Below are positions 15,504-60,908 of a stretch of DNA of 64,000 bases, piece after piece; positions within the stretch are counted from its first letter, which is position 1, and every line of letters starts with the position of its first letter. The notes beneath the pieces were generated by a model, which did not search any database, was not told the origin of the DNA, and saw only the letters and a list, made by a program, of their open reading frames with translations. The position numbers and the translations under genes are program-made. The stretch covers positions 62,001-126,000 of IMG/VR virus record IMGVR_UViG_3300028862_000012, one strand, 5' to 3'.

Positions 15504-15532
15504 TTGACATACTGTAAACTTTTCTCTATAAT
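15504..15532 (+). promoter_or_regulatory. sigma70-type promoter
   Basis: Perfect TTGACA-N17-TATAAT upstream of the clamp gene. Confidence 0.85.
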
Positions 15533-30076: not shown

Positions 30077-31975
30077 ATGACAAAAGAAGAACGTAATCTT
30101 AAAAAATTACAAAAGTATTTTAGAATATATAAAGATAAAGATAAGAATACTGTATCAATGGGTAAGGTTACTTATCCAAAAGATAAAGTAGATAAAGACG
30201 GACATATTAATATTGATGACATAACAATAAAACCTATTGAAATGCCGTCAGATGTTCGTAAAGCTTATAATTATTTTCGTTCAGATTACTTTAGTATTTC
30301 TCATAACAAAAAAGATAGATTTGATAGGTATCTTGATCTTGATTTTATGACAAAAAATGAAGGACTCATGGGTACTGCTTGTCAAATTTATGCTGACGAA
30401 ACAGTTCAGTGCGATGAACAAAATAGAGTTATTGTAATAAATGCTCGAAAAAAAGAGATAGAGAAAAATTTTTATGAATGGTTTAATGATGTAGGTTTTA
30501 CTAAAAATCTTTTACATGACATTGCATGGAATGTTACTTTATATGGTGATAGTTTTTTAATAAACTCAATTGATTTAAATAATGGTGGAGTAACAGAAGT
30601 AGTTCCTATTTCTGTTTATAATGTTTATGATCGTATGGAGTTCAATAGTGTAAAAATAAAAGAGTTTATGAAGAATAGTGGTTATATGTCAAACTTTGCC
30701 TCATTCTTAGGAAAAAATAACTCTTTTAAAGATTTATATAATATGATGACTAAAAGCGGACATGAAGATTATGCAAGTTCTTTTAAAAGTTATTTATTTG
30801 GATACAATATAAATGATGACTATATGTTACCTCCTTGGATGGTAACTCATTTTAGATTATATACTACTGATGATGTTTTTCATCCGTTTGGTATGCCTAT
30901 TTTTATTAAAAGTATAGCTCGATATAAAAGTTTCAAAACTACAGAGCTATTAATGGATATGGCTCGTGTTGCTACATTTCCTAAAGAAATTTATAAGATA
31001 GCAACAGTACCGGGAATGACATTAGTAGAAATATTTAATCGTGTTAATATGGTTCGTGAGCAGTTTTTAAATATAACTAAAGATACTCGCAATCCCGATG
31101 AACTTTCAGTAGGTGAACCTATATTTACTGTTGATGGTTTGTTTGAATATGAGCTTATTCAGACTGATATTGATATTGACAAGATATCTGATTATGAAAA
31201 AAAGCGCGAAGACTTAATTATAAGTACAGGAATTCCAGAAGGTTATCTTATTCTTTCTGATAGAAGCTCCTTTGGTCAATCTGGAAAGTCGTTAATTCAG
31301 CAATCAAAACTCTTTGGTAGACGTGTATATACAATTCAGACTGCAATGCTTGAAGAGATAAGTAATTTATATCGTGTTCATTTACTTATTTCAGGTCAAT
31401 ATGATTTGGAAGCTACTGATTTTGAATTATCTATGAACTTTCCAGTAACAGAAGAAACTGACGAAAAAATAGAAAGTCAAAAGAATTCATTAGAATTAGC
31501 TAGTGATCTTGTTGCTAAAATAACTGAATTAATGGGATTAGATGCTGATGAACACCTTCCATTAGATGTAATAAAAGATATTTATTCTAAGTATTCTTTC
31601 TTAGATGATAATCGCTTAGATGGTTGGATAAAGTCTATAGAAAAATCGAGAGTTGAAAAAGATAAACAAAGTACAGAAAGTAGCGATTCCAATGCAGAGT
31701 TTAATTTTGAAGAAAGAAAGTTAAAAGAAAAAAAGATTAGAGAAAAAATAAAAGAAAGAATGTTATCAGAAGATATGATACGAGAAACATTTTTTAATGT
31801 TAAAAAACAAAACTCTTATAATGAAGGAATTTATTCTGGTAGACATTTTTATACAAGTTGGAGCAGAGGTGATAGAATGTTTGAAGAAAGCTTAACTTTA
31901 TTGAAAAAAGATATGGTTTCAAGACGCTTAAAAGAAAGAAATATACAGAGTGATCAAAAGGAATTAGAGTTTTAA
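30077..31975 (+). CDS. Portal protein (T4 gp20-like)
   Basis: 632 aa at the head of the capsid module. IAWNVTLYGDSFL, LPPWMVTHFRL, PFGMPIFIKSI...LLMDMARVATFPKEIYKI and IISTGIPEGYL match gp20-type portals. Confidence 0.85.
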   Translation: MTKEERNLKKLQKYFRIYKDKDKNTVSMGKVTYPKDKVDKDGHINIDDITIKPIEMPSDVRKAYNYFRSDYFSISHNKKDRFDRYLDLDFMTKNEGLMGTACQIYADETVQCDEQNRVIVINARKKEIEKNFYEWFNDVGFTKNLLHDIAWNVTLYGDSFLINSIDLNNGGVTEVVPISVYNVYDRMEFNSVKIKEFMKNSGYMSNFASFLGKNNSFKDLYNMMTKSGHEDYASSFKSYLFGYNINDDYMLPPWMVTHFRLYTTDDVFHPFGMPIFIKSIARYKSFKTTELLMDMARVATFPKEIYKIATVPGMTLVEIFNRVNMVREQFLNITKDTRNPDELSVGEPIFTVDGLFEYELIQTDIDIDKISDYEKKREDLIISTGIPEGYLILSDRSSFGQSGKSLIQQSKLFGRRVYTIQTAMLEEISNLYRVHLLISGQYDLEATDFELSMNFPVTEETDEKIESQKNSLELASDLVAKITELMGLDADEHLPLDVIKDIYSKYSFLDDNRLDGWIKSIEKSRVEKDKQSTESSDSNAEFNFEERKLKEKKIREKIKERMLSEDMIRETFFNVKKQNSYNEGIYSGRHFYTSWSRGDRMFEESLTLLKKDMVSRRLKERNIQSDQKELEF

Positions 31976-31978
31976 TTA

Positions 31979-32007
31979 TTGACATAAAGATTAAAAAAAG
32001 GTATCAT
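31979..32007 (+). promoter_or_regulatory. sigma70-type promoter of the endonuclease-methyltransferase gene (leaderless geometry)
   Basis: TTGACA-N17-TATCAT. The ATG starts after a 5-nt gap and has no SD. Confidence 0.75.
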
Positions 32008-32012
32008 ATTTA

Positions 32013-34214
32013 ATGATTAAAAAAGGACAAACATTAAAATTATCTTTAGCTACTTTATCAAGGCATAAAAAGCGATATGAGGTTTTAGGTTATAATATAA
32101 ATAAGATTAAGGAAGATAATCCTAATATCCCACTAAATGATATTTACTTAGATATTCCTGCTGAGTTCATACACTCTTCTGGATCTGATTTACCTTTATA
32201 TATGATTTGTGATTTTTGTAATCAGGAATATGAAACTACTTGGAGAAAATATACTAAACTACCGCAAGGGAAGGATGCATGTAATTCTTGTAAAGAATTA
32301 AAAAGAACAAATACTTGTATAGAAAAATATGGAGTAACTAATGTTTTTCAAGAGTTTTCTGTTAAAGAAAAAAGTAAAATAACTTGTTTAGAAAAATATG
32401 GTGTTGAACATGCTATTCAAAATAAAGAAATAATGAATAAAGCAGAAAATAATAAAAAAGTATCTAATAAGAAAAAATATGGTGTTGAGAGTGTATTTAG
32501 CTTATCTTCAGTACAACAAAAATCAAAAGAAACTAATTTAGAAAGATATGGATGTGAATATTCCTGTCAAAATAAAGATATAATAGCTAAAAGATGTCTT
32601 ACAGTAAAAGAAAAATATTCTGATCCTGTTGAGATTAAGAAGGTTTCAGACAAGTTAAAAAATACTATGATGAAAAGATATGGATATACTTCTGCTTTAA
32701 AAAATCCTGAAATATTAGCTAAGAAAACACAAACTATGTTTGATTTATATGGAGAAATAGGCTCTGAAGCAAGAAAAGAATTAGAAGAAAAACGAAAACA
32801 ATCGAATATAGAAAAATATGGTGTAGAGTATCTGCTTCAAAATAAAGAACTTGGAGAAAAAGCAAAGGTAAATAGAAAAGCTTATCTTATGAAAGAGTAT
32901 GGAGTAACTAATAATCTTATTATACCAGAAGTAAAAGAAAAAATAAAGCAAAAGAATATAGAAAAATATGGTGTAGACAGTCCTTTTAAGCTTCCTACTT
33001 TTCAAGAAAAGATTAGACAAATAAATATATTAAAATATGGCACTCCCTATCCTATGCAAAATTCAGAAGTGCGAAGAAAAGTATTTAAGCATAAAGGAAA
33101 GTCAGTACCTGAGTCTAAGTTTGAAGAGATGTTAAAAAATAGAGGCTTTATTTATAAATATGAACTTAATACAAATGGAAAATGCTTTGATTTTACTATT
33201 TATAATATAGATATGACAATAAATACAATTGTAGAAATTGATGGCGAATATAATCATGGACTAAAAAATGATTCAGATGGTTTTCATGTTCATGGAGAAA
33301 AAGATTGTGAACGATTTCAAAAAGTCCCAGATGGAGTTAAATATATAGTATGTAATTCCCTTAACATAGAAGAAGGTTTTTCACAGTTATGCTCAAACTT
33401 TGATGTCAATTATAGTGCTTGGATAAAAGAAATAATTGATGCATGTAATGTTGATTTTCCATATCCTGAATATTCTATTGAGCGTATGAAAAAAGAATAT
33501 AATAAATTAGCTGTTGCAGATTATAAACATAATTCATATGTAGGTCAGTCTATTATTAAGAATTTTCATAAATCAATTTATATTGCTCATGTATCTAATA
33601 AACCGTCCCCAGTTGAAGCTTGGAAGAATTCAGAGTTATTAAAAAAATGTATTGAAAATAGATTTATTTATGCAAACACACTAAGTTCTCAATCTATAGC
33701 TGATGGATTTAATGTTTGTAAAATAGCACCAAAAGTTTCTGTGTTTAGAGCTATTCTAGCGCGCGAGCTAATATTAAAATATTTAAATCAATATGACACA
33801 ATTTTTGATCCTTTTTCTGGATTTAGCGGTCGTATGTTAGGAACAACTTGTTTAAATAAAAAATATATTGGACAAGATATAAACAATACTTTTGTAAAAG
33901 AAAGTAATGAAATCATTAATTTTTTAAACTTAAATGCAAGTGTTTTAGAAAAAGATATTTTTGAAAGCTATGGAGAATATGACTGTTTATTTACTTGTTC
34001 TCCTTATAATTTAAAAGAAACATGGAATAACAGTAATCAAAAAAATCTAAGTTGCGATGAATGGATTGATATATGTTTATCTCATTTTAAATGTAAGTCA
34101 TATTTATTTGTAGTTGATGAAACTATTAAGTATAAAGATTACATTGTAGAGGAAATAAAAAATACAAGCCATTTTGGAAGAAATATAGAAAAAGTTATTC
34201 TTATAAGAAAATAA
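32013..34214 (+). CDS. Homing-endonuclease-like protein (Zn domain, EKYGV repeats, Vsr/DUF559-type PD-(D/E)xK nuclease) fused to a DNA amino-methyltransferase
   Basis: CDFC...CNSC, about 8 xxEKYGVx repeats, KSVPE...FDF...IVEIDGEYNHG nuclease, then IFDPFSGFSGRMLG (motif I) and LFTCSPY (motif IV variant). Confidence 0.75.
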   Translation: MIKKGQTLKLSLATLSRHKKRYEVLGYNINKIKEDNPNIPLNDIYLDIPAEFIHSSGSDLPLYMICDFCNQEYETTWRKYTKLPQGKDACNSCKELKRTNTCIEKYGVTNVFQEFSVKEKSKITCLEKYGVEHAIQNKEIMNKAENNKKVSNKKKYGVESVFSLSSVQQKSKETNLERYGCEYSCQNKDIIAKRCLTVKEKYSDPVEIKKVSDKLKNTMMKRYGYTSALKNPEILAKKTQTMFDLYGEIGSEARKELEEKRKQSNIEKYGVEYLLQNKELGEKAKVNRKAYLMKEYGVTNNLIIPEVKEKIKQKNIEKYGVDSPFKLPTFQEKIRQINILKYGTPYPMQNSEVRRKVFKHKGKSVPESKFEEMLKNRGFIYKYELNTNGKCFDFTIYNIDMTINTIVEIDGEYNHGLKNDSDGFHVHGEKDCERFQKVPDGVKYIVCNSLNIEEGFSQLCSNFDVNYSAWIKEIIDACNVDFPYPEYSIERMKKEYNKLAVADYKHNSYVGQSIIKNFHKSIYIAHVSNKPSPVEAWKNSELLKKCIENRFIYANTLSSQSIADGFNVCKIAPKVSVFRAILARELILKYLNQYDTIFDPFSGFSGRMLGTTCLNKKYIGQDINNTFVKESNEIINFLNLNASVLEKDIFESYGEYDCLFTCSPYNLKETWNNSNQKNLSCDEWIDICLSHFKCKSYLFVVDETIKYKDYIVEEIKNTSHFGRNIEKVILIRK

Positions 34215-34253
34215 TTTATTAAAATTTAACTAACTATTATATTAAGTATAACT

Positions 34254-35972
34254 ATGTATATAAAAGGCATATCAATGAGACAGAAATTAGTTGAAAAATT
34301 TAATAGAGACTGGAAAGAAACTAAATTAAAGCCTGTTTTTTTTCCTCTCACTGAATCTACTAAATTAGTAGAGGGAATAAACGGAGATAAATATAATTGT
34401 TTAAGTTGTTATCTTATTCCTATATGGAAGCTTGATGAAGAAAATCTAAATGGAAGGAAATATTCCCGATCTTTAGCGGAAAAAATTGTTAAAGAAAATA
34501 AAGTTACTGTATCATTAGATAGTCATCCAGAAGACGATAATTATGTTCCAGTAATTGCAGATGTTATAGCAATCGGAAAAGATCCTGTTATTAAAGATGG
34601 AATACTTTGGGCTTATGCTTATTTTGTATCAGAGGAAGTTGATAAGAAAGTCCATAGAATGCTTGATTTAGGGTTTCCTTTACAACAGTCTTCTTCTGGC
34701 CTAGGTGAAGTAGATTATAATAATGTAGTTATAACAGAAACTTATGACCTTGAACGATATTTTGACTTTTTGGTTCAGGATAGTAGCTATCAAGTTTATA
34801 CTACAAAAGAGAATGAAATAATAACAGATAAACCTCAGAAAATGGAAAGTACAGATATAAAAGAAAGTATAAAAGAAAGTATAGAGGAAAAAATTATTGA
34901 ACCGGTTCTTGAAAAATTAGAGGAATCTAAAAAAGAATATTTAAAAGAAAATGTAACTATTAGTAATATAGGTAAATCTATAAATATAAAGGAAAAAACT
35001 ATGGCAGAAAATAAAAGTTTAAGACTTAATGTAAAGAGTCTTATACGTGAGGCAAAGGCTAAAGAGGATCTTTCTGAAAAAAATATCTTGTTAAAAGAAG
35101 CTTTTGGTGCAATTAAGAACGAGTCTGGCTTTGAGGATATGAAGAAAGATATTGTTTTACTGTTAAAGGAAACAGATTTAAGTATTTCTAATCTTGCAAA
35201 GAAAGGTAAAACTGTTGACTCTGTTACTTCAAAGTACAATGAGTCTGCTAAGGAAGCAGTGGCTTTAAAAGCAGAACGTGAAATTTTTGTTGGTAAGATT
35301 CAAGAGTCTGCTAATAAGCTTAAACAGGTTTCTGCTACTGCTAAAGATCTTGCTAAAAAGTTTAAGGAAGCATCTACTAAGTTTAAAGAAAACTCTGACA
35401 AGAATAAAGATGCTTTTAATAAGTTAAAAGAGTCTGCTATAGCTAATGCTAAACTTATAGAGTCTAATGCTAAACTTGTAGAAAAATCTATTATAGCATT
35501 AGACCTTATTAAAGAGCGCTACAATACTTTAGAATTCCGTAATGAAGCACTTGCTCGTAAGGTAGAACAGCTTATTAATGAAAATAATAAGAAAGATCGT
35601 GAGATTCGTCGAATGTCTCGTCAGAATGAAGCACAGGAACCTCGTAGTCGTTCAGTTAGAGAATCAGTAAATGAAGATTCTTATAATACTGAAATGCCTG
35701 ATGAATATAAGCAGACTGAAGAAGTAACTCGCTATTATGAAGATACTGTTCGTCGAAAACCCTATTTAGCTCGTTTCAAAGAAAAGATATTGAATAGTAA
35801 AACTGTACAAGATGCAATGTATCGGGTTTTGCAGATTGACGGTGATGATTTTGATGAAAAAGCTGGGAAACATAATTCCATTAACGAGAGCATTGAAAAG
35901 ATCGATGATGGAAGAGAAGTAAAACAGTCAATGGGTTCAAGTCTCTTAGGAAAGCGCCCCGGCTGGAACTAA
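34254..35972 (+). CDS. Prohead protease (gp21-like) fused to a coiled-coil scaffold (gp22-like)
   Basis: ENLNGRKYS, LDSHP (catalytic His) and QSSSGLGEV (catalytic Ser region), followed by a long K/E coiled coil. Confidence 0.8.
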   Translation: MYIKGISMRQKLVEKFNRDWKETKLKPVFFPLTESTKLVEGINGDKYNCLSCYLIPIWKLDEENLNGRKYSRSLAEKIVKENKVTVSLDSHPEDDNYVPVIADVIAIGKDPVIKDGILWAYAYFVSEEVDKKVHRMLDLGFPLQQSSSGLGEVDYNNVVITETYDLERYFDFLVQDSSYQVYTTKENEIITDKPQKMESTDIKESIKESIEEKIIEPVLEKLEESKKEYLKENVTISNIGKSINIKEKTMAENKSLRLNVKSLIREAKAKEDLSEKNILLKEAFGAIKNESGFEDMKKDIVLLLKETDLSISNLAKKGKTVDSVTSKYNESAKEAVALKAEREIFVGKIQESANKLKQVSATAKDLAKKFKEASTKFKENSDKNKDAFNKLKESAIANAKLIESNAKLVEKSIIALDLIKERYNTLEFRNEALARKVEQLINENNKKDREIRRMSRQNEAQEPRSRSVRESVNEDSYNTEMPDEYKQTEEVTRYYEDTVRRKPYLARFKEKILNSKTVQDAMYRVLQIDGDDFDEKAGKHNSINESIEKIDDGREVKQSMGSSLLGKRPGWN

Positions 35973-36818: not shown

Positions 36819-38315
36819 ATGGGTTTTGATAATGAGACTCGCAGACCGTTGCGGGAAATGCGCGGTCGTTCACTTAGAGAAAGTAATAAGCGTTTAAATG
36901 ATTCTGCTATTAGGGGTCAGTATGATGATTATACTCGTGAGCTTGATGAGAAGAATCAAAAGTTAGTAGAGTCTTGGTCACAGGAAGATGGTCTTGAACT
37001 TGATGGTGGTCGTTTACAGGCTATGGGTGAAAAGAAAGCTACTGCACTGGTTAATTTACTTGAAGAGACTAAACGTGGTTTTAAGAACTTACGTGAGTAT
37101 CAGACTAGCTCTTTAGGTGGTTTGTTACCGCAGGAAATTGTTAAGGCAGTTCGTTATGGATATCCTAACTCTGTAATGTTCGATCTTTTCGATGTTTGGC
37201 AGATGAGTTCCGTAAAGGATACCTTCTATAAGTTAACGACTAAGTATGGAAGTACTCAGCGTGGAGCTACGGAAGGTCAGATAATCTACGAGAAGTATAA
37301 CAATGGTGATTATCCATCAGAGTACGAGACTGATACTGTTACTGTTAGTACGGGTACTGCTCAGAGCGGTGATCTTACTTACGAAAATATTCGTGAGTAC
37401 CATGTTATGGTGTATCTCAACGGTGCATTGGTTGCTCGTGACGATGGTGCAGGAAAGCTTGTTTCTACTGATGAAAAGTTTACTTCTGGTACGCTTGTTT
37501 ATGCAACTGGTGTTTATAATTTAACGTTTGCTCAGTCTATTACTGCTGGTACTGATGTTGTTACTATTCGTTATGCTTCTAGTTCAGAACCGTTAGCTTA
37601 TAATCGTCAGGGAACTGCAATACTGGATCTTGAAGCATATGATTTCCGTGCAACGTTCTTTAGCCTTAATGCTATGTGGAATCAGATGACTGAAGAGATT
37701 TTGCAGTCTAAGCTCAAGATGAGCGCTCGTGAGAATTTACTCATGGGTATTGCTGATCTTATTAAAAAGTCATTAGACGAAATGGCTATTTTCTACGGAA
37801 AGGCCGCTTCTAAATGGGCTACTCCTGAAGAGTTTGATACCAACTGGTCTAATGCTGGTGCCGATAGTGATTACGCTAACGCGCAGTCTTTAATTGGTGC
37901 TATCGAAAATGCAAAAGCTAAAACGTATGAGGCTCTTGGTCGTGAAGCCCCGAAGACTAATATTCTTTGTGGTTCTCGTGCTTTCGTGTATGTACAGAAG
38001 CACAAGTTATTTACTCCTGATAACTCTATGCCCCGTATTGGTGTGTATAAGTTTGGAAACATTAATGGTCAGGACTTGTACAAGGCTCCTAACGATATTT
38101 GTGATAAGGACATGATGTACATGTTTGGTAAGGGCGATGACTCCATAAACGTGGACTCCCCGGTTTCGATCGGAATGTGGAAGATGGGTATTGAATCTCA
38201 AGAGATTCAGCATTCTAACTTTGTTAGTGAGAAGGGTATTGGTGTAATGGCTGACTTCCAGATCAATAACAAAAAGTTTGCTACCTCGTTGAAGCTCAAG
38301 AACTTAATCGCTTAG
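36819..38315 (+). CDS. Major capsid protein (T4 gp23-like, HK97 fold)
   Basis: 498 aa. Cleavable N-terminal leader, LLPQEIVKAVRYGYPNSVMFDLFDVWQM (gp23-like P..i..vr...p.....l..vqpm), higher GC, strong terminator downstream. Confidence 0.88.
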   Translation: MGFDNETRRPLREMRGRSLRESNKRLNDSAIRGQYDDYTRELDEKNQKLVESWSQEDGLELDGGRLQAMGEKKATALVNLLEETKRGFKNLREYQTSSLGGLLPQEIVKAVRYGYPNSVMFDLFDVWQMSSVKDTFYKLTTKYGSTQRGATEGQIIYEKYNNGDYPSEYETDTVTVSTGTAQSGDLTYENIREYHVMVYLNGALVARDDGAGKLVSTDEKFTSGTLVYATGVYNLTFAQSITAGTDVVTIRYASSSEPLAYNRQGTAILDLEAYDFRATFFSLNAMWNQMTEEILQSKLKMSARENLLMGIADLIKKSLDEMAIFYGKAASKWATPEEFDTNWSNAGADSDYANAQSLIGAIENAKAKTYEALGREAPKTNILCGSRAFVYVQKHKLFTPDNSMPRIGVYKFGNINGQDLYKAPNDICDKDMMYMFGKGDDSINVDSPVSIGMWKMGIESQEIQHSNFVSEKGIGVMADFQINNKKFATSLKLKNLIA

Positions 38316-38334
38316 ATTAATGAATTAATTAGCG

Positions 38335-38366
38335 AAGACCGTAGAGAAATCTACGGTCTTTTTTTT
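38335..38366 (+). terminator. Intrinsic terminator after MCP
   Basis: AAGACCGTAGA-GAAA-TCTACGGTCTT-TTTTT. Confidence 0.9.
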
Positions 38367-38370
38367 GTTA

Positions 38371-38399
38371 TTGACAACATTAGTAAATAAATATAGAAT
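38371..38399 (+). promoter_or_regulatory. sigma70-type promoter of the Hef-like endonuclease gene
   Basis: TTGACA-N17-TAGAAT. Confidence 0.75.
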
Positions 38400-38420
38400 A
38401 GTAAAAAAGGTATATAAAAA

Positions 38421-40184
38421 ATGATAGATTACAATCAAGTTGTAAATGTTAGTTTACATTCAATTTTAAATAAAAGAGTTTATTATGAAAAACAAGGATT
38501 TAATGTAGACAACTTAAAACTCAAAGTAAATGAATTAACATGCAGAACTTATACAAATAAAGATTATTCTAATGTATCTATTGAAATGCCTTTATGTAAA
38601 GTATTTCCATCAGCAAGTTCACAAATTAAAGTAAAAGTAGTATGTGATTATTGCCACACTGAATATGAAACTATGTATATGATAGTATTATCTCGTTCTG
38701 GTAAAAATTGTTGTAAAAATTGTATTCACGCTAAGTCTGCTGAAAGCTTAAAGAAAGAATTTGGTGTAACAAATGTGTCTCAATTAGACTCTATAAAGTT
38801 AAAGAAAAAAGAATTAAGCTTACAGAAGTTTGGAACAATAACCCCATTACAAAATAAAGAGATTAAAGAAAAAATAGTTAAAACAAACATAGAAAAATAT
38901 GGTGTTAAATATGCATCTATGCTAAAAGAAAAAGTAGATTATACTAAAGAAGCATGGAAAAATAAAACAGAAGAGGAACTATCTGACATAAGGTATAGAC
39001 GAGACAAAACTTGGTTATTAAATAGAGGATTTTTAGAAGAGACTTTAGCTCAGGCTGAAAAAGATAAAGTTTCCTTTACTGAAATTAAAAGAAACTTTAA
39101 TAGAAAAGTTAGTTATTCTACTTTAAGTAATTTTGCTATATCTCAAAACTTTTCTATACTCACTTCATTTGAAGAGTTTAAATCTTTTATTTATGAAAAA
39201 GGTAAGACAATCAGATTTAAGTGTAATACTTGTGATACTGAATTTTTTCAGTATATGAATTATGGATTTGTATCAGATGATAGTAGAATTGAATGTCCTA
39301 AATGTCCTTCTGCTATTGGAAGTCGCGAAGAAAATGAAGTTCTTGATTATATTAAATCTATTTATTTTAATGAAATTATTCATAGCTATAAATTAATTAA
39401 TAGAAAAGAAATAGATATAGTTATTCCAGAATTCAATTTAGGAATAGAATATAATGGATCATATTGGCATAATGATAAGTTTCGCGGAAAATATTATCAT
39501 ATAGAAAAATACAATTCAGCTAAAGAAGAAAAAATAGACCTTATTTTTATTAATGATTTTGAATGGAAGTATAAGCAGGATATAGTTAAATCAATTATAA
39601 AGAATAGATTAAAGATAGTCGATAAACGACTATATGCTCGTAAGGGAATTATTAGCTTAGTTGATTCATCTACTGCTAAAGAATTTTTCTATGTTAATCA
39701 TATTCAGGGTAGTAAAAGTATAAACTCTAAAATGATTTCTATTGGATTATACATAGATTCTGAACTTGTTTCTTTAGTAAGTTTTAATAAAACAAAGTAT
39801 AGAAAAGATTATGAATATGATTTAGTACGTTATGCAAATAAATTAGGCTATCAAGTTATAGGCGGGTTTAGTAAAATACTTTCGTTTTTTGAAAAAGCTT
39901 ATAAACCATCAAGTATAGTAACCTTTTCTGAAATACGGTTGTTTAAGTCCTCTGTTTATGAAAAAGCAGGGTTTACTTTAGACCATATTACCAGACCAAA
40001 TTACTTTTATACAAAAAATAATATATTTGCTGGTTCTCGTCAAAACTTTCAAAAAAGTAAGTTAAAGAAATTATTTGATGATTATACTGACTCTAAAACA
40101 GAAAGTGAAATGATGGCAGAACATAATTACGATAAAATTTGGGATTGCGGAGTACGAGTTTTTGTAAAAAAGTATCAAAAGTAA
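38421..40184 (+). CDS. Hef-like homing endonuclease (Zn domain, repeats, PD-(D/E)xK nuclease, C-terminal GNAT-like domain)
   Basis: GSREENEV...EIDIVIPEFNLGIEYNGSYWH, NHIQG, IGGFSKIL..F and YEKAGF...PNY form the Hef-like pattern of T4-like phages. Confidence 0.75.
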   Translation: MIDYNQVVNVSLHSILNKRVYYEKQGFNVDNLKLKVNELTCRTYTNKDYSNVSIEMPLCKVFPSASSQIKVKVVCDYCHTEYETMYMIVLSRSGKNCCKNCIHAKSAESLKKEFGVTNVSQLDSIKLKKKELSLQKFGTITPLQNKEIKEKIVKTNIEKYGVKYASMLKEKVDYTKEAWKNKTEEELSDIRYRRDKTWLLNRGFLEETLAQAEKDKVSFTEIKRNFNRKVSYSTLSNFAISQNFSILTSFEEFKSFIYEKGKTIRFKCNTCDTEFFQYMNYGFVSDDSRIECPKCPSAIGSREENEVLDYIKSIYFNEIIHSYKLINRKEIDIVIPEFNLGIEYNGSYWHNDKFRGKYYHIEKYNSAKEEKIDLIFINDFEWKYKQDIVKSIIKNRLKIVDKRLYARKGIISLVDSSTAKEFFYVNHIQGSKSINSKMISIGLYIDSELVSLVSFNKTKYRKDYEYDLVRYANKLGYQVIGGFSKILSFFEKAYKPSSIVTFSEIRLFKSSVYEKAGFTLDHITRPNYFYTKNNIFAGSRQNFQKSKLKKLFDDYTDSKTESEMMAEHNYDKIWDCGVRVFVKKYQK

Positions 40185-59191: not shown

Positions 59192-59439
59192 GTACAGATT
59201 TTTGTTGTCCTGATTGTAAATGGTGGCCTCCTGATAGTTATTACTATATTAAAGAAAAGCAAGTTATTGAATGTAGTAACAATATAAAACATAATGTATA
59301 TCCAAAGTATTTAGAAATTTATACTGATTGGAAAAATCGTAGATGTTATCGGAAAGTATTTAAATGTGGAAAATGTTTTAAAGAGTTTGAACAAAGTATA
59401 GTAGAGGAAAACATTATTGTAGAGGAAAAAGATGATTAA
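59188..59439 (+). CDS. Small Cys-rich protein
   Basis: CPDC...C...CGKC. Overlaps the helicase stop (ATGA). Confidence 0.55.
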   Translation: MSTDFCCPDCKWWPPDSYYYIKEKQVIECSNNIKHNVYPKYLEIYTDWKNRRCYRKVFKCGKCFKEFEQSIVEENIIVEEKDD

Positions 59440-60199
59440 AAATAATAGTATACACGAAGGTGATTGTTTAGATATATTGCCATTAATTGAAGATAAATCT
59501 ATAGATATGGTTTTGGCAGATTTGCCTTTTGAGACAACTCAGAACTTTTGGGATGTATTAATTGATTTACCTAAACTTTGGATTCAGTATGAACGAGTAA
59601 TAAAAGATAACGGAGCTATACTTTTATTTGCTCAAACACCTTTTGATAAAATACTTGGATGTAGTAACTTAAAATTATTAAAATATGAATGGATATGGGA
59701 AAAAAGCAAAGCTACTGGATTTTTAAATGCTAAAAAGTTTCCATTAAAAGCCCATGAGAATATTTTAGTGTTCTATAAGCATCCTCATATTTATAACCCT
59801 CAAATGACTAAAGGTACACCTTATAATAAAGGATTAATTAAAGCACAAAATGGGAACGGTAGCTATTCAAACTATAATGAAAAGGTAGGGAAGAATGATA
59901 CAGGAGATAGATTACCTCGCGATGTTATTTATTTTAAGACAGCAGAAACAGAGGGTAAACAGACTCATAGTACTCAAAAGCCTGTAGCTTTATTAGAGTA
60001 TTTTATAAAGACTTATACTAACGAAAACATGCTAGTATTAGATAATTGCGCCGGAAGTTTTAGTACAGGGGTAGCTTGTTGTAATACAAATAGAAATTAT
60101 ATCTTGATTGAAAAAGATCATGATATTTTTTGTAAAGGGAAAGCTCGATTAGAAAAAGTGTTGGAAGATAAGCAAAATAGCTTATTAACTATTTTATAA
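59432..60199 (+). CDS. DNA N6-A/N4-C methyltransferase (beta class)
   Basis: GDCLD, ADLPF (DPPY-like), HSTQKPVALLEYFIKTYT and VLDNCAGSFSTG. Confidence 0.9.
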   Translation: MIKNNSIHEGDCLDILPLIEDKSIDMVLADLPFETTQNFWDVLIDLPKLWIQYERVIKDNGAILLFAQTPFDKILGCSNLKLLKYEWIWEKSKATGFLNAKKFPLKAHENILVFYKHPHIYNPQMTKGTPYNKGLIKAQNGNGSYSNYNEKVGKNDTGDRLPRDVIYFKTAETEGKQTHSTQKPVALLEYFIKTYTNENMLVLDNCAGSFSTGVACCNTNRNYILIEKDHDIFCKGKARLEKVLEDKQNSLLTIL

Positions 60200-60209
60200 G
60201 GAAAAAATA

Positions 60210-60908
60210 ATGTGTTATATGGGTGGAAAAAATAGAATTAGAAAACAAATATCAGTGTTTCTTGAAAGCGTAAGAAAACCAGAACAAACATATTTTGAGC
60301 CGTTTGTTGGCGGTGCGTGGGTTTTGCAGGAAATGAGTGGGAAGCGTATTGCAAGTGATGGAAATAATGCGTTAATAACTATGTATAAGGCTTTACAATC
60401 AGGATGGATACCTCCTGATGAAATAACTTTAGAACAATATAACTATTATAAAAAAATAAAAAATGAACAAGATCCTATGACTGCTTTTGTTGGTTTTGGA
60501 TGTAGTCATAGTGGAAAATGGTTTAATGGATTTGCACATAGTAATACTAGAAATTATTGTTATAATGCAAAAAATAGTTTATTGAAACAATTAGAATATA
60601 TTAAAGATGTAGAGTTTATATACGGAGATTTTAAAGATCATGAACCAAGGGACTGTTTAATTTATTGTGATCCGCCTTACAAAGATACTACAAGCTATGG
60701 TTATTTTAAATCATTTAATTATGAATTATATTATGAGACTATTAAATTATGGAGCTATAATAATACTGTAATTGTTTCTGAATATAATATGCCAGAAGAT
60801 TTTGAGTGTGTTTTAGAAATAAATACTAAAACAGACATGAGAACAAAAAACTTAGTAGAACAATCTAGAGTTGAAAAATTATTTAGATATAAAAGAGGTA
60901 TTAAATGA
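60210..60908 (+). CDS. Dam/D12-class N6-adenine methyltransferase (alpha class)
   Basis: YMGGK, YFEPFVGG and IYCDPPY. Confidence 0.9.
   Translation: MCYMGGKNRIRKQISVFLESVRKPEQTYFEPFVGGAWVLQEMSGKRIASDGNNALITMYKALQSGWIPPDEITLEQYNYYKKIKNEQDPMTAFVGFGCSHSGKWFNGFAHSNTRNYCYNAKNSLLKQLEYIKDVEFIYGDFKDHEPRDCLIYCDPPYKDTTSYGYFKSFNYELYYETIKLWSYNNTVIVSEYNMPEDFECVLEINTKTDMRTKNLVEQSRVEKLFRYKRGIK

What the first reader, a model, noticed from the sequence alone, without database searches (positions are those of the whole stretch)
32013..34214. Homing-endonuclease-like gene fused to a DNA methyltransferase, inserted between portal and protease
Seen in one 733-aa ORF: Zn-binding N-domain, about 8 EKYGV repeats, a Vsr/DUF559-type nuclease (SxxE...FDF...EIDGEYNH), a helical linker and a SAM-dependent amino-MTase (FDPFSGFSG; FTCSPY). 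It has its own sigma70 promoter inside a late gene cluster, typical of a selfish insertion. Inference: a self-protecting mobile nuclease that cuts unmethylated competitor alleles or co-infecting phage DNA while methylating its own genome, i.e. a single-chain restriction-modification-like homing element.
Basis: partly seen in the sequence, partly recalled or inferred. Interest (0 to 1): 0.65.

Follow-up and report, generated by a model that had tools for sequence, protein, structure and literature searches.

The report
Mobile phage nuclease fused to methyltransferase
A peat jumbo phage carries, between its portal and prohead-protease genes, an inserted selfish gene whose single protein joins a DNA-reading repeat array, a homing-type nuclease and a DNA methyltransferase; it belongs to a large family that nobody has studied, known only from uncultivated phages.

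Summary
The ORF is real: 32013..34214, 733 aa. It has four parts. (1) A CxxC..CxxC zinc ribbon and 11 KYG repeats (DUF7487), not about 8. (2) A Vsr/EDxHD-type nuclease whose best structural match is the homing endonuclease I-Bth0305I. (3) A helical region that resembles a target-recognition domain. (4) An amino-methyltransferase core with motif I DPFSGFSGR and motif IV CSPY.

A relative with about 70% identity in the flanking genes has the portal and protease genes adjacent with no insert. The gene is therefore a roughly 2.25-kb insertion that carries its own promoter-like element.

The fusion is not a one-off. More than 4000 relatives exist, all in uncultivated phages, in varied genomic contexts. 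The methyltransferase module is the constant part and also occurs alone. This nuclease subfamily was found with the methyltransferase module, or with a decayed remnant of it, in 137 of the 150 best representatives. One remnant form has an intact methyltransferase two genes downstream; two others have none within 5 kb.

The mobile nuclease-methyltransferase fusion is well supported. The "self-protecting" mechanism is plausible, has mixed circumstantial support and is untested. No published description was found.

The parts
31976..34225 (+). Inserted segment of about 2.25 kb: the ORF plus 37 nt upstream and about 12 nt downstream
   Evidence: The empty site in L002/L008 joins the portal stop codon directly to the conserved spacer TTAACTATTAT..AAAAGG..ATGAGA.
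31979..32007 (+). Sigma-70-like promoter-like element, TTGACA-17-TATCAT (11 of 12)
   Evidence: It lies inside the insert. Its -10 element ends 6 nt before the ATG, so a transcript from it would be nearly leaderless. Function is untested.
32013..34214 (+). 733-aa ORF (P0001), stop codon included
32208..32291 (+). Zinc ribbon, aa 66-93 (CxxC..CxxC)
   Evidence: C69 and C90 are nearly invariant in the alignment.
32292..33077 (+). Eleven KYG repeats (DUF7487), aa 94-355; presumed sequence-reading DNA-binding array
   Evidence: The number of repeats varies among relatives. Similar arrays occur in annotated phage homing endonucleases (phrog_12131, phrog_3339). Related repeated DUF723/CapR modules are proposed, from prediction, to be DNA-binding modules of such genes (bioRxiv 10.1101/2023.03.23.533998).
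33078..33422 (+). Vsr/EDxHD-type PD-(D/E)xK nuclease domain, aa 356-470
   Evidence: The best Foldseek match of the domain model is 3r3p, I-Bth0305I (E 4.9e-3, prob 1.0, TM 0.52/0.63), followed by 3hrl, a DUF559 protein. 15 of 22 relatives match Pfam MTES_1575 and 8 of 22 match Vsr. The acidic and His residues are invariant.
33423..33782 (+). Conserved helical region, aa 471-590; resembles a target-recognition domain plus motif X
   Evidence: Helices in the AF2 model. PADLOC Type II methyltransferase profile PDLC03353 aligns to aa 477-631, profile positions 104-246 of 260. The region is retained even in forms with a remnant methyltransferase.
33783..34211 (+). SAM-dependent amino-methyltransferase Rossmann core, aa 591-733 (motif I at aa 598-607, motif IV at aa 659-665)
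   Evidence: AF2 pLDDT 91.4. VIA-align: METTL5 Z 15.7, Trm14 15.1, Trm11 14.8, TGS1 14.3. Pfam N6_N4_Mtase scores 27.3 bits on the C-terminal half against a cut-off of 26.7, and 56 of 68 relatives match it.
30077..31975 (+). Upstream flank: T4 gp20-like portal gene
   Evidence: Ortholog at 68-70% identity in L002.
34275..35972 (+). Downstream flank: prohead protease/scaffold-like gene (true start at 34275)

Best explanation
This is a free-standing, mobile (homing-type) endonuclease gene that has inserted precisely into the spacer between the portal and prohead-protease genes of a 224-kb peat phage. Its product is one polypeptide with three working parts.

The N-terminal zinc ribbon and the 11 KYG repeats read a long DNA site. 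This is inferred. The Vsr/EDxHD-type nuclease cuts genomes that lack the gene near that site, so that recombinational repair copies the gene in. The nuclease fold and residues are shown; the cutting is inferred. The C-terminal amino-methyltransferase is a permuted relative of Type II N4/N6 DNA methyltransferases. It probably modifies a short motif that the conserved nuclease domain needs. DNA of the carrier phage would therefore be packaged already methylated and would resist cutting, while an unmethylated co-infecting relative would be cut. This coupling is inferred.

The gene belongs to a very large uncharacterised family of uncultivated-phage proteins. In that family the methyltransferase module is the constant part, and the nuclease and repeat modules have been gained or lost many times.
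For: Presence or absence at one syntenic site. L002/L008 have portal and protease orthologs 39 nt apart with no insert, and the spacer is conserved up to the insert edge.

Relatives sit in unrelated contexts: after the major capsid gene, beside dnaB, between gyrB and an intein-bearing gyrA-like gene, and in clusters of similar genes.

The nuclease's closest structure is a proven homing endonuclease. Its catalytic signature is kept in nearly all of 150 representatives.

Methyltransferase motifs I and IV are invariant across 22 fused relatives and are found by pattern in nearly all of the 233 modules of every architecture.

The two-domain AF2 model has pTM 0.85, which points to a fixed nuclease-methyltransferase unit.

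The association is asymmetric. Of the 150 best representatives of the nuclease profile, 126 carry the methyltransferase module and 11 carry a decayed remnant of it. In contrast, 66 of the 233 methyltransferase modules collected stand alone.

One remnant form has an intact methyltransferase of the same family two genes downstream.

A sigma-70-like promoter-like element lies inside the insert, which would fit early expression.
Against: No activity has been measured. Only one independent empty-site lineage was found; L002 and L008 are 99.9% identical.

Two remnant-methyltransferase forms with an intact nuclease signature have no methyltransferase of this family within 5 kb, so strict dependence is not shown.

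The methyltransferase's recognition-like region is conserved while the repeat arrays vary. The methyltransferase therefore cannot be reading the same long site as the array.

Its nearest solved folds are RNA m2G/m6A methyltransferases, so the DNA target rests on profile matches and on the fused partners.

Motif IV starts with Cys, which no paper in the searched library mentions.

The phage also has two ordinary orphan methyltransferases.

The promoter's -10 element overlaps the likely ribosome-binding site.
Confidence: 0.45

Rival explanations
1. Homing endonuclease with a methyltransferase as independent cargo. The nuclease and repeats make the gene mobile. The methyltransferase is an ordinary anti-restriction orphan methyltransferase that benefits the phage and travels with the gene, and it plays no part in controlling the nuclease.
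For: The methyltransferase module is common as a free-standing protein of about 268 aa, and also occurs fused to repeats without a nuclease. Architectures interleave on the methyltransferase tree, with at least 36 changes. Remnant-methyltransferase forms keep the nuclease signature, and two of them have no methyltransferase within 5 kb. The phage already carries two other orphan methyltransferases.
Against: Cargo does not need a translational fusion, yet the fusion is kept in 126 of 150 nuclease representatives down to about 40% identity. The nuclease subfamily was hardly ever found without at least a remnant of the module. The model predicts a fixed two-domain unit.
Confidence: 0.25
2. Phage-borne single-chain restriction-modification enzyme that works like a Type IIG enzyme. 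It degrades unmethylated host or competitor DNA at many sites and protects the phage genome. Its spread reflects ordinary gene flow, not homing.
For: The domain order (PD-(D/E)xK nuclease, helical region, then a methyltransferase with motifs I to VIII in linear order) resembles BpuSI, which appears among the Foldseek matches (3s1s). The nuclease-to-methyltransferase association is asymmetric.
Against: The long, variable repeat array shared with annotated homing endonucleases implies rare long sites. The insertion into an intergenic spacer of a conserved structural module is precise. There is no C-terminal recognition domain, and the BpuSI match is weak (TM 0.34/0.16).
Confidence: 0.12
3. Domesticated or decaying element. 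The nuclease no longer cuts, and the protein acts as a site-targeted methyltransferase or a DNA-binding regulator in the late gene cluster.
For: Homing genes often decay after they become fixed. Forms with repeats and a methyltransferase but no nuclease exist.
Against: All putative catalytic residues of the nuclease are intact here and in nearly all relatives. The gene is not fixed.
Confidence: 0.08
4. Vsr-type repair nickase coupled to its methyltransferase, by analogy with Vsr-Dcm. The nuclease would nick mismatches caused by deamination at methylated sites.
For: Vsr-like fold. Vsr genes are classically linked to methyltransferase genes (established knowledge).
Against: The methyltransferase is an amino-methyltransferase, not a C5 enzyme, so no T:G mismatch problem arises. 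The Vsr zinc site (the FVDGCFWHxH pattern, cited from memory) is not present in the sequence. The repeat array and the presence/absence polymorphism fit mobility rather than repair.
Confidence: 0.05

Closest known systems
EDxHD / Vsr-like homing endonucleases (I-Bth0305I, PDB 3r3p; Hef-type phage enzymes; PMC3239194)
   Same: Vsr-like PD-(D/E)xK catalytic fold. Conserved set of acidic and His residues. An N-terminal modular DNA-binding region precedes a C-terminal nuclease. Phage-borne and mobile.
   Different: I-Bth0305I is encoded in an intron, uses NUMOD motifs and has no methyltransferase. Here the gene is free-standing, uses a zinc ribbon plus 11 DUF7487 repeats, and continues into a methyltransferase module of about 265 aa. 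The sequence profile found no PDB relative.
Free-standing phage homing genes with repeated zinc-finger DNA-binding arrays (T5orf172 genes with CapR/DUF723/DUF4379; bioRxiv 10.1101/2023.03.23.533998)
   Same: Repeated, exchangeable DNA-binding modules in front of a nuclease. Location at boundaries between conserved phage genes. DUF723 and CapR hits occur among family members.
   Different: The nuclease is of a different class (Vsr-like, not T5orf172/GIY-YIG-like). That paper does not mention a methyltransferase anywhere.
Type IIG/IIC single-chain restriction-modification enzymes (BpuSI 3s1s, MmeI)
   Same: One chain carries a PD-(D/E)xK nuclease, a helical connector and an amino-methyltransferase with motifs I to VIII in linear order. 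The logic of cutting unmethylated DNA while marking one's own DNA could be shared.
   Different: There is no C-terminal target-recognition domain; site reading is presumably done by an N-terminal repeat array. The gene is encoded by a phage inside a structural gene cluster. Similarity is at fold level only and is weak.
Type II N4/N6 DNA methyltransferases, Pfam PF01555 (beta class)
   Same: The region before and including motif I aligns to these profiles. Motif IV is of the xPPY type.
   Different: Motif IV lies after motif I instead of before it, a circular permutation relative to the beta class. The first residue of motif IV is Cys (Ser in a few relatives). The core is minimal, about 140 aa.
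Vsr-Dcm pair of E. coli
   Same: A Vsr-fold nuclease genetically tied to a DNA methyltransferase.
   Different: Vsr-Dcm is two proteins, a C5 methyltransferase and a mismatch nickase with a repair role. None of these features is seen here.

Membership tests
EDxHD / Vsr-like homing endonucleases | Vsr-like PD-(D/E)xK catalytic fold | tested here: met
   The best Foldseek match of the isolated domain model is 3r3p (prob 1.0, E 4.9e-3, TM 0.52/0.63), followed by the DUF559 protein 3hrl. 15 of 22 relatives match MTES_1575 and 8 of 22 match Vsr in Pfam. The model's pLDDT is only 74.7.
EDxHD / Vsr-like homing endonucleases | Conserved composite catalytic set (Glu, Asp, His, Asp) | tested here: inconclusive
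   E367, D393, D410, H415 and D431 are invariant or nearly so in 22 relatives and 150 representatives. Residue-by-residue equivalence to I-Bth0305I D196, H213 and D222 was not checked by superposition.
EDxHD / Vsr-like homing endonucleases | Mobility: present or absent at the same site in related genomes | tested here: met
   Empty site in L002/L008. This is one independent lineage only.
EDxHD / Vsr-like homing endonucleases | Site-specific cleavage of the allele that lacks the gene | not testable with these tools
   Needs an enzyme assay on the L002-type junction.
Type II N4/N6 DNA amino-methyltransferases (PF01555) | Score above Pfam's curated cut-off | tested here: inconclusive
   The whole protein scores 24.6 bits, below 26.7. 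The C-terminal half alone scores 27.3 bits, above 26.7, and 56 of 68 relatives match, best E 7.6e-11. Only the part of the profile around motif I aligns.
Type II N4/N6 DNA amino-methyltransferases (PF01555) | SAM-binding motif I and an acidic residue after strand 2 | tested here: met
   DPFSGFSGR and D622 are invariant. Variants DP[FC]xG[FY]SGR occur in the free-standing forms.
Type II N4/N6 DNA amino-methyltransferases (PF01555) | Catalytic motif IV (D/N/S)PP(Y/F) | tested here: inconclusive
   CSPY here, CPPY in most relatives and SPPY in a few. The Pro-Tyr pair is invariant. Cys at the first position is found in no paper of the searched library.
Type II N4/N6 DNA amino-methyltransferases (PF01555) | Beta-class motif order (IV to VIII before X and I to III) | tested here: not met
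   Motif IV (aa 659-665) follows motif I (aa 598-607); read directly from the sequence. This is a permuted relative, not a beta-class member.
Type IIG single-chain restriction-modification enzymes | Nuclease and methyltransferase in one chain sharing a C-terminal target-recognition domain | tested here: not met
   The protein ends with the last strands of the Rossmann core. No C-terminal domain is present.
Type IIG single-chain restriction-modification enzymes | Methylation blocks the enzyme's own cleavage | not testable with these tools
   Needs biochemistry.
Vsr mismatch endonuclease | C5-methyltransferase partner and Vsr zinc site | tested here: not met
   The partner is an amino-methyltransferase. 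No C5 methyltransferase is found in the genome. The sequence reads DGEYNHG where Vsr has its Cys/His cluster (the Vsr pattern is cited from memory).

The most novel reading that the evidence does not exclude
Homing guided by an epigenetic mark. In this family a homing-type nuclease depends on a fused or neighbouring methyltransferase, so that carrier genomes arrive in a co-infected cell already methylated and immune, while unmethylated relatives are cut and converted. The conserved nuclease-methyltransferase core would supply the cutting and the immunity, and the freely exchangeable KYG repeat array would set the address. The forms with repeats and a methyltransferase but no nuclease could then be immunity-only derivatives.
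Probability: 0.35. Interest if true: 0.8.

Novelty: new variant of a known kind. Interest (0 to 1): 0.62.

Why it matters
Homing endonucleases and restriction-modification systems are the two classic selfish nuclease strategies. They are normally treated as separate: one gains immunity through a changed target sequence, the other through methylation. A large natural family that welds a homing-type nuclease to a methyltransferase would link them, and would make the question "can methylation serve as homing immunity?" directly testable. The family also offers a compact nuclease-methyltransferase core with a modular repeat array whose DNA-reading rules are unknown. It appears to be confined to uncultivated phages: only Lak megaphages and one uncultured phage match among 50,697 GenBank phage records. 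Its methyltransferase module may account for some methylation marks seen in environmental phage DNA.

Tried and rejected
- Megablast of the 6-kb locus against GenBank phages gave only a 53-bp chance-size hit.
- NCBIfam gave nothing.
- PHROGs and Pfam did not name the flanking genes, even at E = 1.
- A profile of the nuclease domain against PDB sequences gave no hit. The fold had to be shown by structure prediction.
- Foldseek and VIA-align on the two-domain model were dominated by the methyltransferase and said nothing about the nuclease.
- Scans of viral contigs and metagenome contigs for more relatives of the flanking genes returned only the window's own phage and one other lineage. The empty-site evidence therefore rests on one lineage.
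- Sequencing runs: the only holder is the peat sample that is probably the source, and it is kept as contigs. Laying it showed no variant without the insert and no RNA evidence.
- Paper searches for DUF7487, for 'CPPY' with methyltransferase, and for a free-standing homing endonuclease with a methyltransferase domain found nothing.
- Source names for eight clusters: none are recorded.
- Whole-record search of the long contigs that carry remnant-methyltransferase forms was not possible because the records are not held. Whether those genomes have a methyltransferase elsewhere is unknown.
- A Type IIG reading was considered and not adopted as membership, because there is no C-terminal recognition domain.
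- A Vsr-Dcm-type repair reading was rejected, because the partner is an amino-methyltransferase.
- No other genetic code was used. No spliced model was involved.
Full report
**1. What is there**

The window is bases 62001-126000 of a 223,865-bp virus record with about 27% G+C, estimated 91% complete. The only sequencing run that holds it is a peat metagenome.

The ORF at 32013..34214 (+) is open for 733 codons.
- A four-cysteine zinc ribbon lies at aa 66-93.
- The KYG-type repeats number 11, not about 8, with a 23-27 aa period. Pfam DUF7487 scores E 1.4e-40.
- The nuclease-like motifs are S364..E367, FDF at 392-394 and EIDGEYNH at 408-415.
- The methyltransferase motifs are FDPFSGFSGR at 598-607 and FTCSPY at 660-665.

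**2. The domains**

An AlphaFold2 model of aa 355-733, built on 68 relatives, is confident: pLDDT 91.4 and pTM 0.85. The high pTM for a two-domain model suggests the domains form one fixed unit.

*Nuclease.* The nuclease part modelled alone has pLDDT 74.7. Its best Foldseek match in the PDB is the catalytic domain of the homing endonuclease I-Bth0305I (3r3p; prob 1.0, E 4.9e-3, TM 0.52/0.63). The next match is the DUF559 protein NGO0050, and further PD-(D/E)xK nucleases follow. At sequence level, 15 of 22 relatives match Pfam MTES_1575 and 8 of 22 match Vsr. P0001 itself does not match, and a profile search of PDB sequences found nothing. E367, D393, D410, H415, D420, D431 and R434 are invariant among 22 relatives and are kept in nearly all of 150 distant representatives. 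I-Bth0305I is the founder of the 'EDxHD' family, whose members are Vsr-like and carry an N-terminal modular DNA-binding region (PMC3239194).

*Methyltransferase.* The core (aa 500-733) superposes best on exocyclic-amine methyltransferases that have an xPP(Y/F) motif. These are METTL5 (Z 15.7), Trm14 (15.1), Trm11 (14.8), an RsmD-like protein (14.5) and TGS1 (14.3). All of these act on RNA. The sequence profiles that match, however, are DNA enzymes.
- Pfam N6_N4_Mtase scores 27.3 bits on the C-terminal half against a cut-off of 26.7, and 56 of 68 relatives match it.
- A PADLOC Type II methyltransferase profile aligns across aa 477-631, which is profile positions 104-246 of 260.
- A cytosine-N4 DNA methyltransferase is the only weak PDB sequence hit.

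The so-called helical linker (aa 471-590) is therefore homologous to the middle part of small Type II methyltransferases, the region that resembles a target-recognition domain plus motif X. The motif order is I before IV, so the module is a circular permutation relative to the beta class. Motif IV is CPPY in most relatives, CSPY here and SPPY in a few. From established knowledge, a Ser or Cys start is closer to N4-cytosine enzymes (SPPY) than to N6-adenine enzymes (D/NPPY). That is a lead, not a result.

**3. It is an insertion**

The upstream 632-aa protein resembles T4 gp20-type portals (Atlas 0.97; TM 0.63-0.65). The downstream protein resembles S77/S80 prohead proteases, on weaker evidence (0.92).

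A related phage contig, L002, carries the portal ortholog at 68-70% identity. Only 39 nt further on it carries the ortholog of the downstream gene at 46% identity. The same contig was seen at 99.9% identity in a second sample as L008. The 733-aa gene is absent from both.

The spacer in front of the downstream gene is conserved between the two phages: TTAACTATTAT ... AAAAGG ... ATGAGA. This places the insert at about 31976..34225, which is the ORF plus 37 nt upstream and about 12 nt downstream. It also shows that the downstream gene starts at 34275.

The 37 nt brought in with the gene contain TTGACA-17-TATCAT. This pattern occurs only twice in the 64 kb, against 0.48 expected. Promoter-like matches in general are not enriched in the region: 18 were found against 21 expected. 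The -10 element overlaps the probable ribosome-binding site AAAGG, so function is uncertain.

Only one independent empty-site lineage could be found.

**4. It belongs to a large, unstudied family**

The word search found more than 4282 relatives of the whole protein, with top identities of 44-58%. Almost all have no source name.

The C-terminal part of about 375 aa aligns colinearly and is highly conserved. The N-terminal zinc ribbon and repeats vary greatly in number.

Relatives lie in unrelated contexts.
- One follows a gp23-type capsid gene (L004).
- One lies beside dnaB (L006).
- One lies in a cluster of DUF7487/DUF723 genes (L005).
- One lies between gyrB and an intein-bearing gyrA-like gene (L015).

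The second such gene in the window (38421..40184) shares only the N-terminal module and matches PHROGs annotated 'homing endonuclease' over its full length. Repeated zinc-finger modules of the DUF723/CapR kind have been proposed, from prediction, as the DNA-binding parts of free-standing phage homing genes (bioRxiv 10.1101/2023.03.23.533998).

Among 50,697 GenBank phage records, only Lak megaphages (methyltransferase part, 38-43% identity) and one uncultured phage match. No paper in the searched library mentions DUF7487 or such a fusion.

**5. How the modules travel together**

The methyltransferase module (aa 470-733) also exists in three other forms: as a free-standing protein of about 268 aa, as nuclease plus methyltransferase without repeats (about 390 aa), and as repeats or DUF723 plus methyltransferase without a nuclease. 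On a tree of the module the four architectures interleave. At least 36 changes are needed, and well-supported branches alone force 7-13 changes per class. Some short forms may be truncated gene calls.

The reverse search used the nuclease profile against 1.84 billion representatives and gave 1143 hits. The best 150 break down as follows.
- 126 carry the methyltransferase module.
- 11 carry a tail of about 150 aa that is a decayed remnant of the module. The helical part and strands 1-2 remain recognisable, motif I is lost, and the protein ends before motif IV.
- Most of the remaining 13 look like truncated ORFs.

The remnant forms keep the nuclease signature and are complete genes inside contigs.

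In one remnant form (L009/L010) an intact free-standing methyltransferase of the same family (304 aa, E 1e-83) lies two genes downstream. In two others with 5-kb flanks (L014, L015) none is nearby. The rest of those genomes could not be searched.

**6. Interpretation**

The following is shown. The gene is a composite of a repeat array, a Vsr/EDxHD-fold nuclease and a Type II-like amino-methyltransferase, all with intact signatures. It is present in one phage and absent at the same site in a relative. It belongs to a family scattered over many contexts.

The following is inferred. The array reads a long site. The nuclease cuts genomes that lack the gene, and repair copies the gene in. This is the standard homing mechanism of free-standing phage endonucleases.

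The role of the methyltransferase is the open point. Three observations favour functional coupling.
- The nuclease is almost never found without the module, while the module is often found alone. This is the pattern of restriction enzymes and their methyltransferases.
- The translational fusion is conserved across deep divergence.
- The model predicts a fixed two-domain unit.

A workable scheme follows from this. The conserved methyltransferase marks a short motif that the equally conserved nuclease domain needs at the cut site, while the variable array sets the address. Carrier DNA is packaged methylated, and an unmethylated co-infecting relative is cut.

Three observations count against strict coupling: the two remnant forms with no nearby methyltransferase, the many independent rearrangements of the modules, and the two ordinary orphan methyltransferases elsewhere in this phage. 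The main rival reading is that the methyltransferase is simply useful anti-restriction cargo.

My probabilities are about 0.8 that this is a mobile homing-type nuclease with an active fused methyltransferase, and about 0.45 for the full statement including methylation-based immunity.

**7. Novelty and score**

Each domain is of a known kind, and single-chain nuclease-methyltransferases (Type IIG) are known. The new elements are a homing-type gene that carries the methyltransferase, the repeat array as its address module, the permuted CPPY methyltransferase, and the family-wide asymmetry between nuclease and methyltransferase. I rate it a new variant of a known kind, with interest 0.62.

Noticed in passing
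window 38421..40184 (+), with upstream 38330..38420: A second homing-endonuclease-like gene (587 aa; phrog_3339 E 1.6e-101; DUF7487 repeats; a different Vsr-like motif, EID..EYNGxxWH; no methyltransferase) lies directly after the putative capsid gene. A strong hairpin plus T-run terminator and a TTGACA-17-TAGAAT promoter-like element precede it. Unlike the 733-aa gene, it is present at the same place in the relative L002 (644 aa, 40% identity).
   Followed up: partly
window 59432..60199 and 60210..60908 (+): Two adjacent ordinary orphan DNA methyltransferase genes: N6_N4_Mtase (E 4e-26) and a Dam-like MethyltransfD12. The phage therefore has at least three methyltransferase genes. No C5 methyltransferase was found.
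   Followed up: partly
L009 2705..6136 (also L010): An operon-like trio: repeats plus nuclease with a remnant methyltransferase tail (506 aa), an unknown 338-aa ORF that overlaps it by 20 nt, then an intact free-standing methyltransferase of the same family (304 aa). This looks like a split version of the fusion.
   Followed up: partly
L015 5001..9942: A remnant-methyltransferase member sits between gyrB and a gyrA/topoIV-like gene that itself carries an intein with an HNH domain. Two selfish elements sit at one locus.
   Followed up: no
L005 1863..8801: Four adjacent genes with DUF7487 or DUF723 repeat arrays (358, 319, 624 and 299 aa) lie in one phage contig, with further methyltransferase genes 3-5 kb away. 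This is a hotspot for such elements.
   Followed up: no
window 31968..31978 and 34214..34228: Imperfect 8-bp direct repeat at the two edges of the insert (TTTAATTA and TTTAACTA). The empty site reads TTTTTAATTAAC. In DNA with 27% G+C this may be chance.
   Followed up: partly
window 34254..34275: The longest ORF of the downstream gene starts at 34254. Comparison with L002 shows the conserved start is the ATG at 34275 (MRQKLVEKF), which is preceded by AAAAGG.
   Followed up: yes
window 30077..31975: The last 100 residues or so of the portal, next to the insertion, are much less conserved against L002 (35-47% identity) than its middle (80-88%). This could be an intrinsically variable tail, or divergence linked to the endonuclease target.
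   Followed up: partly
window 36819..38315: The 498-aa gene (71% identity to L002; only phrog_1014 of unknown function) lies in the one region of raised G+C (0.377 against about 0.28). It is probably the major capsid protein, but sequence profiles do not name it.
   Followed up: no
window about 14800 and 15504..15532: Gene orientation and GC skew switch sign near 12-15 kb. The only other perfect TTGACA-N17-TATAAT promoter-like site in the window lies there, facing the rightward genes.
   Followed up: no
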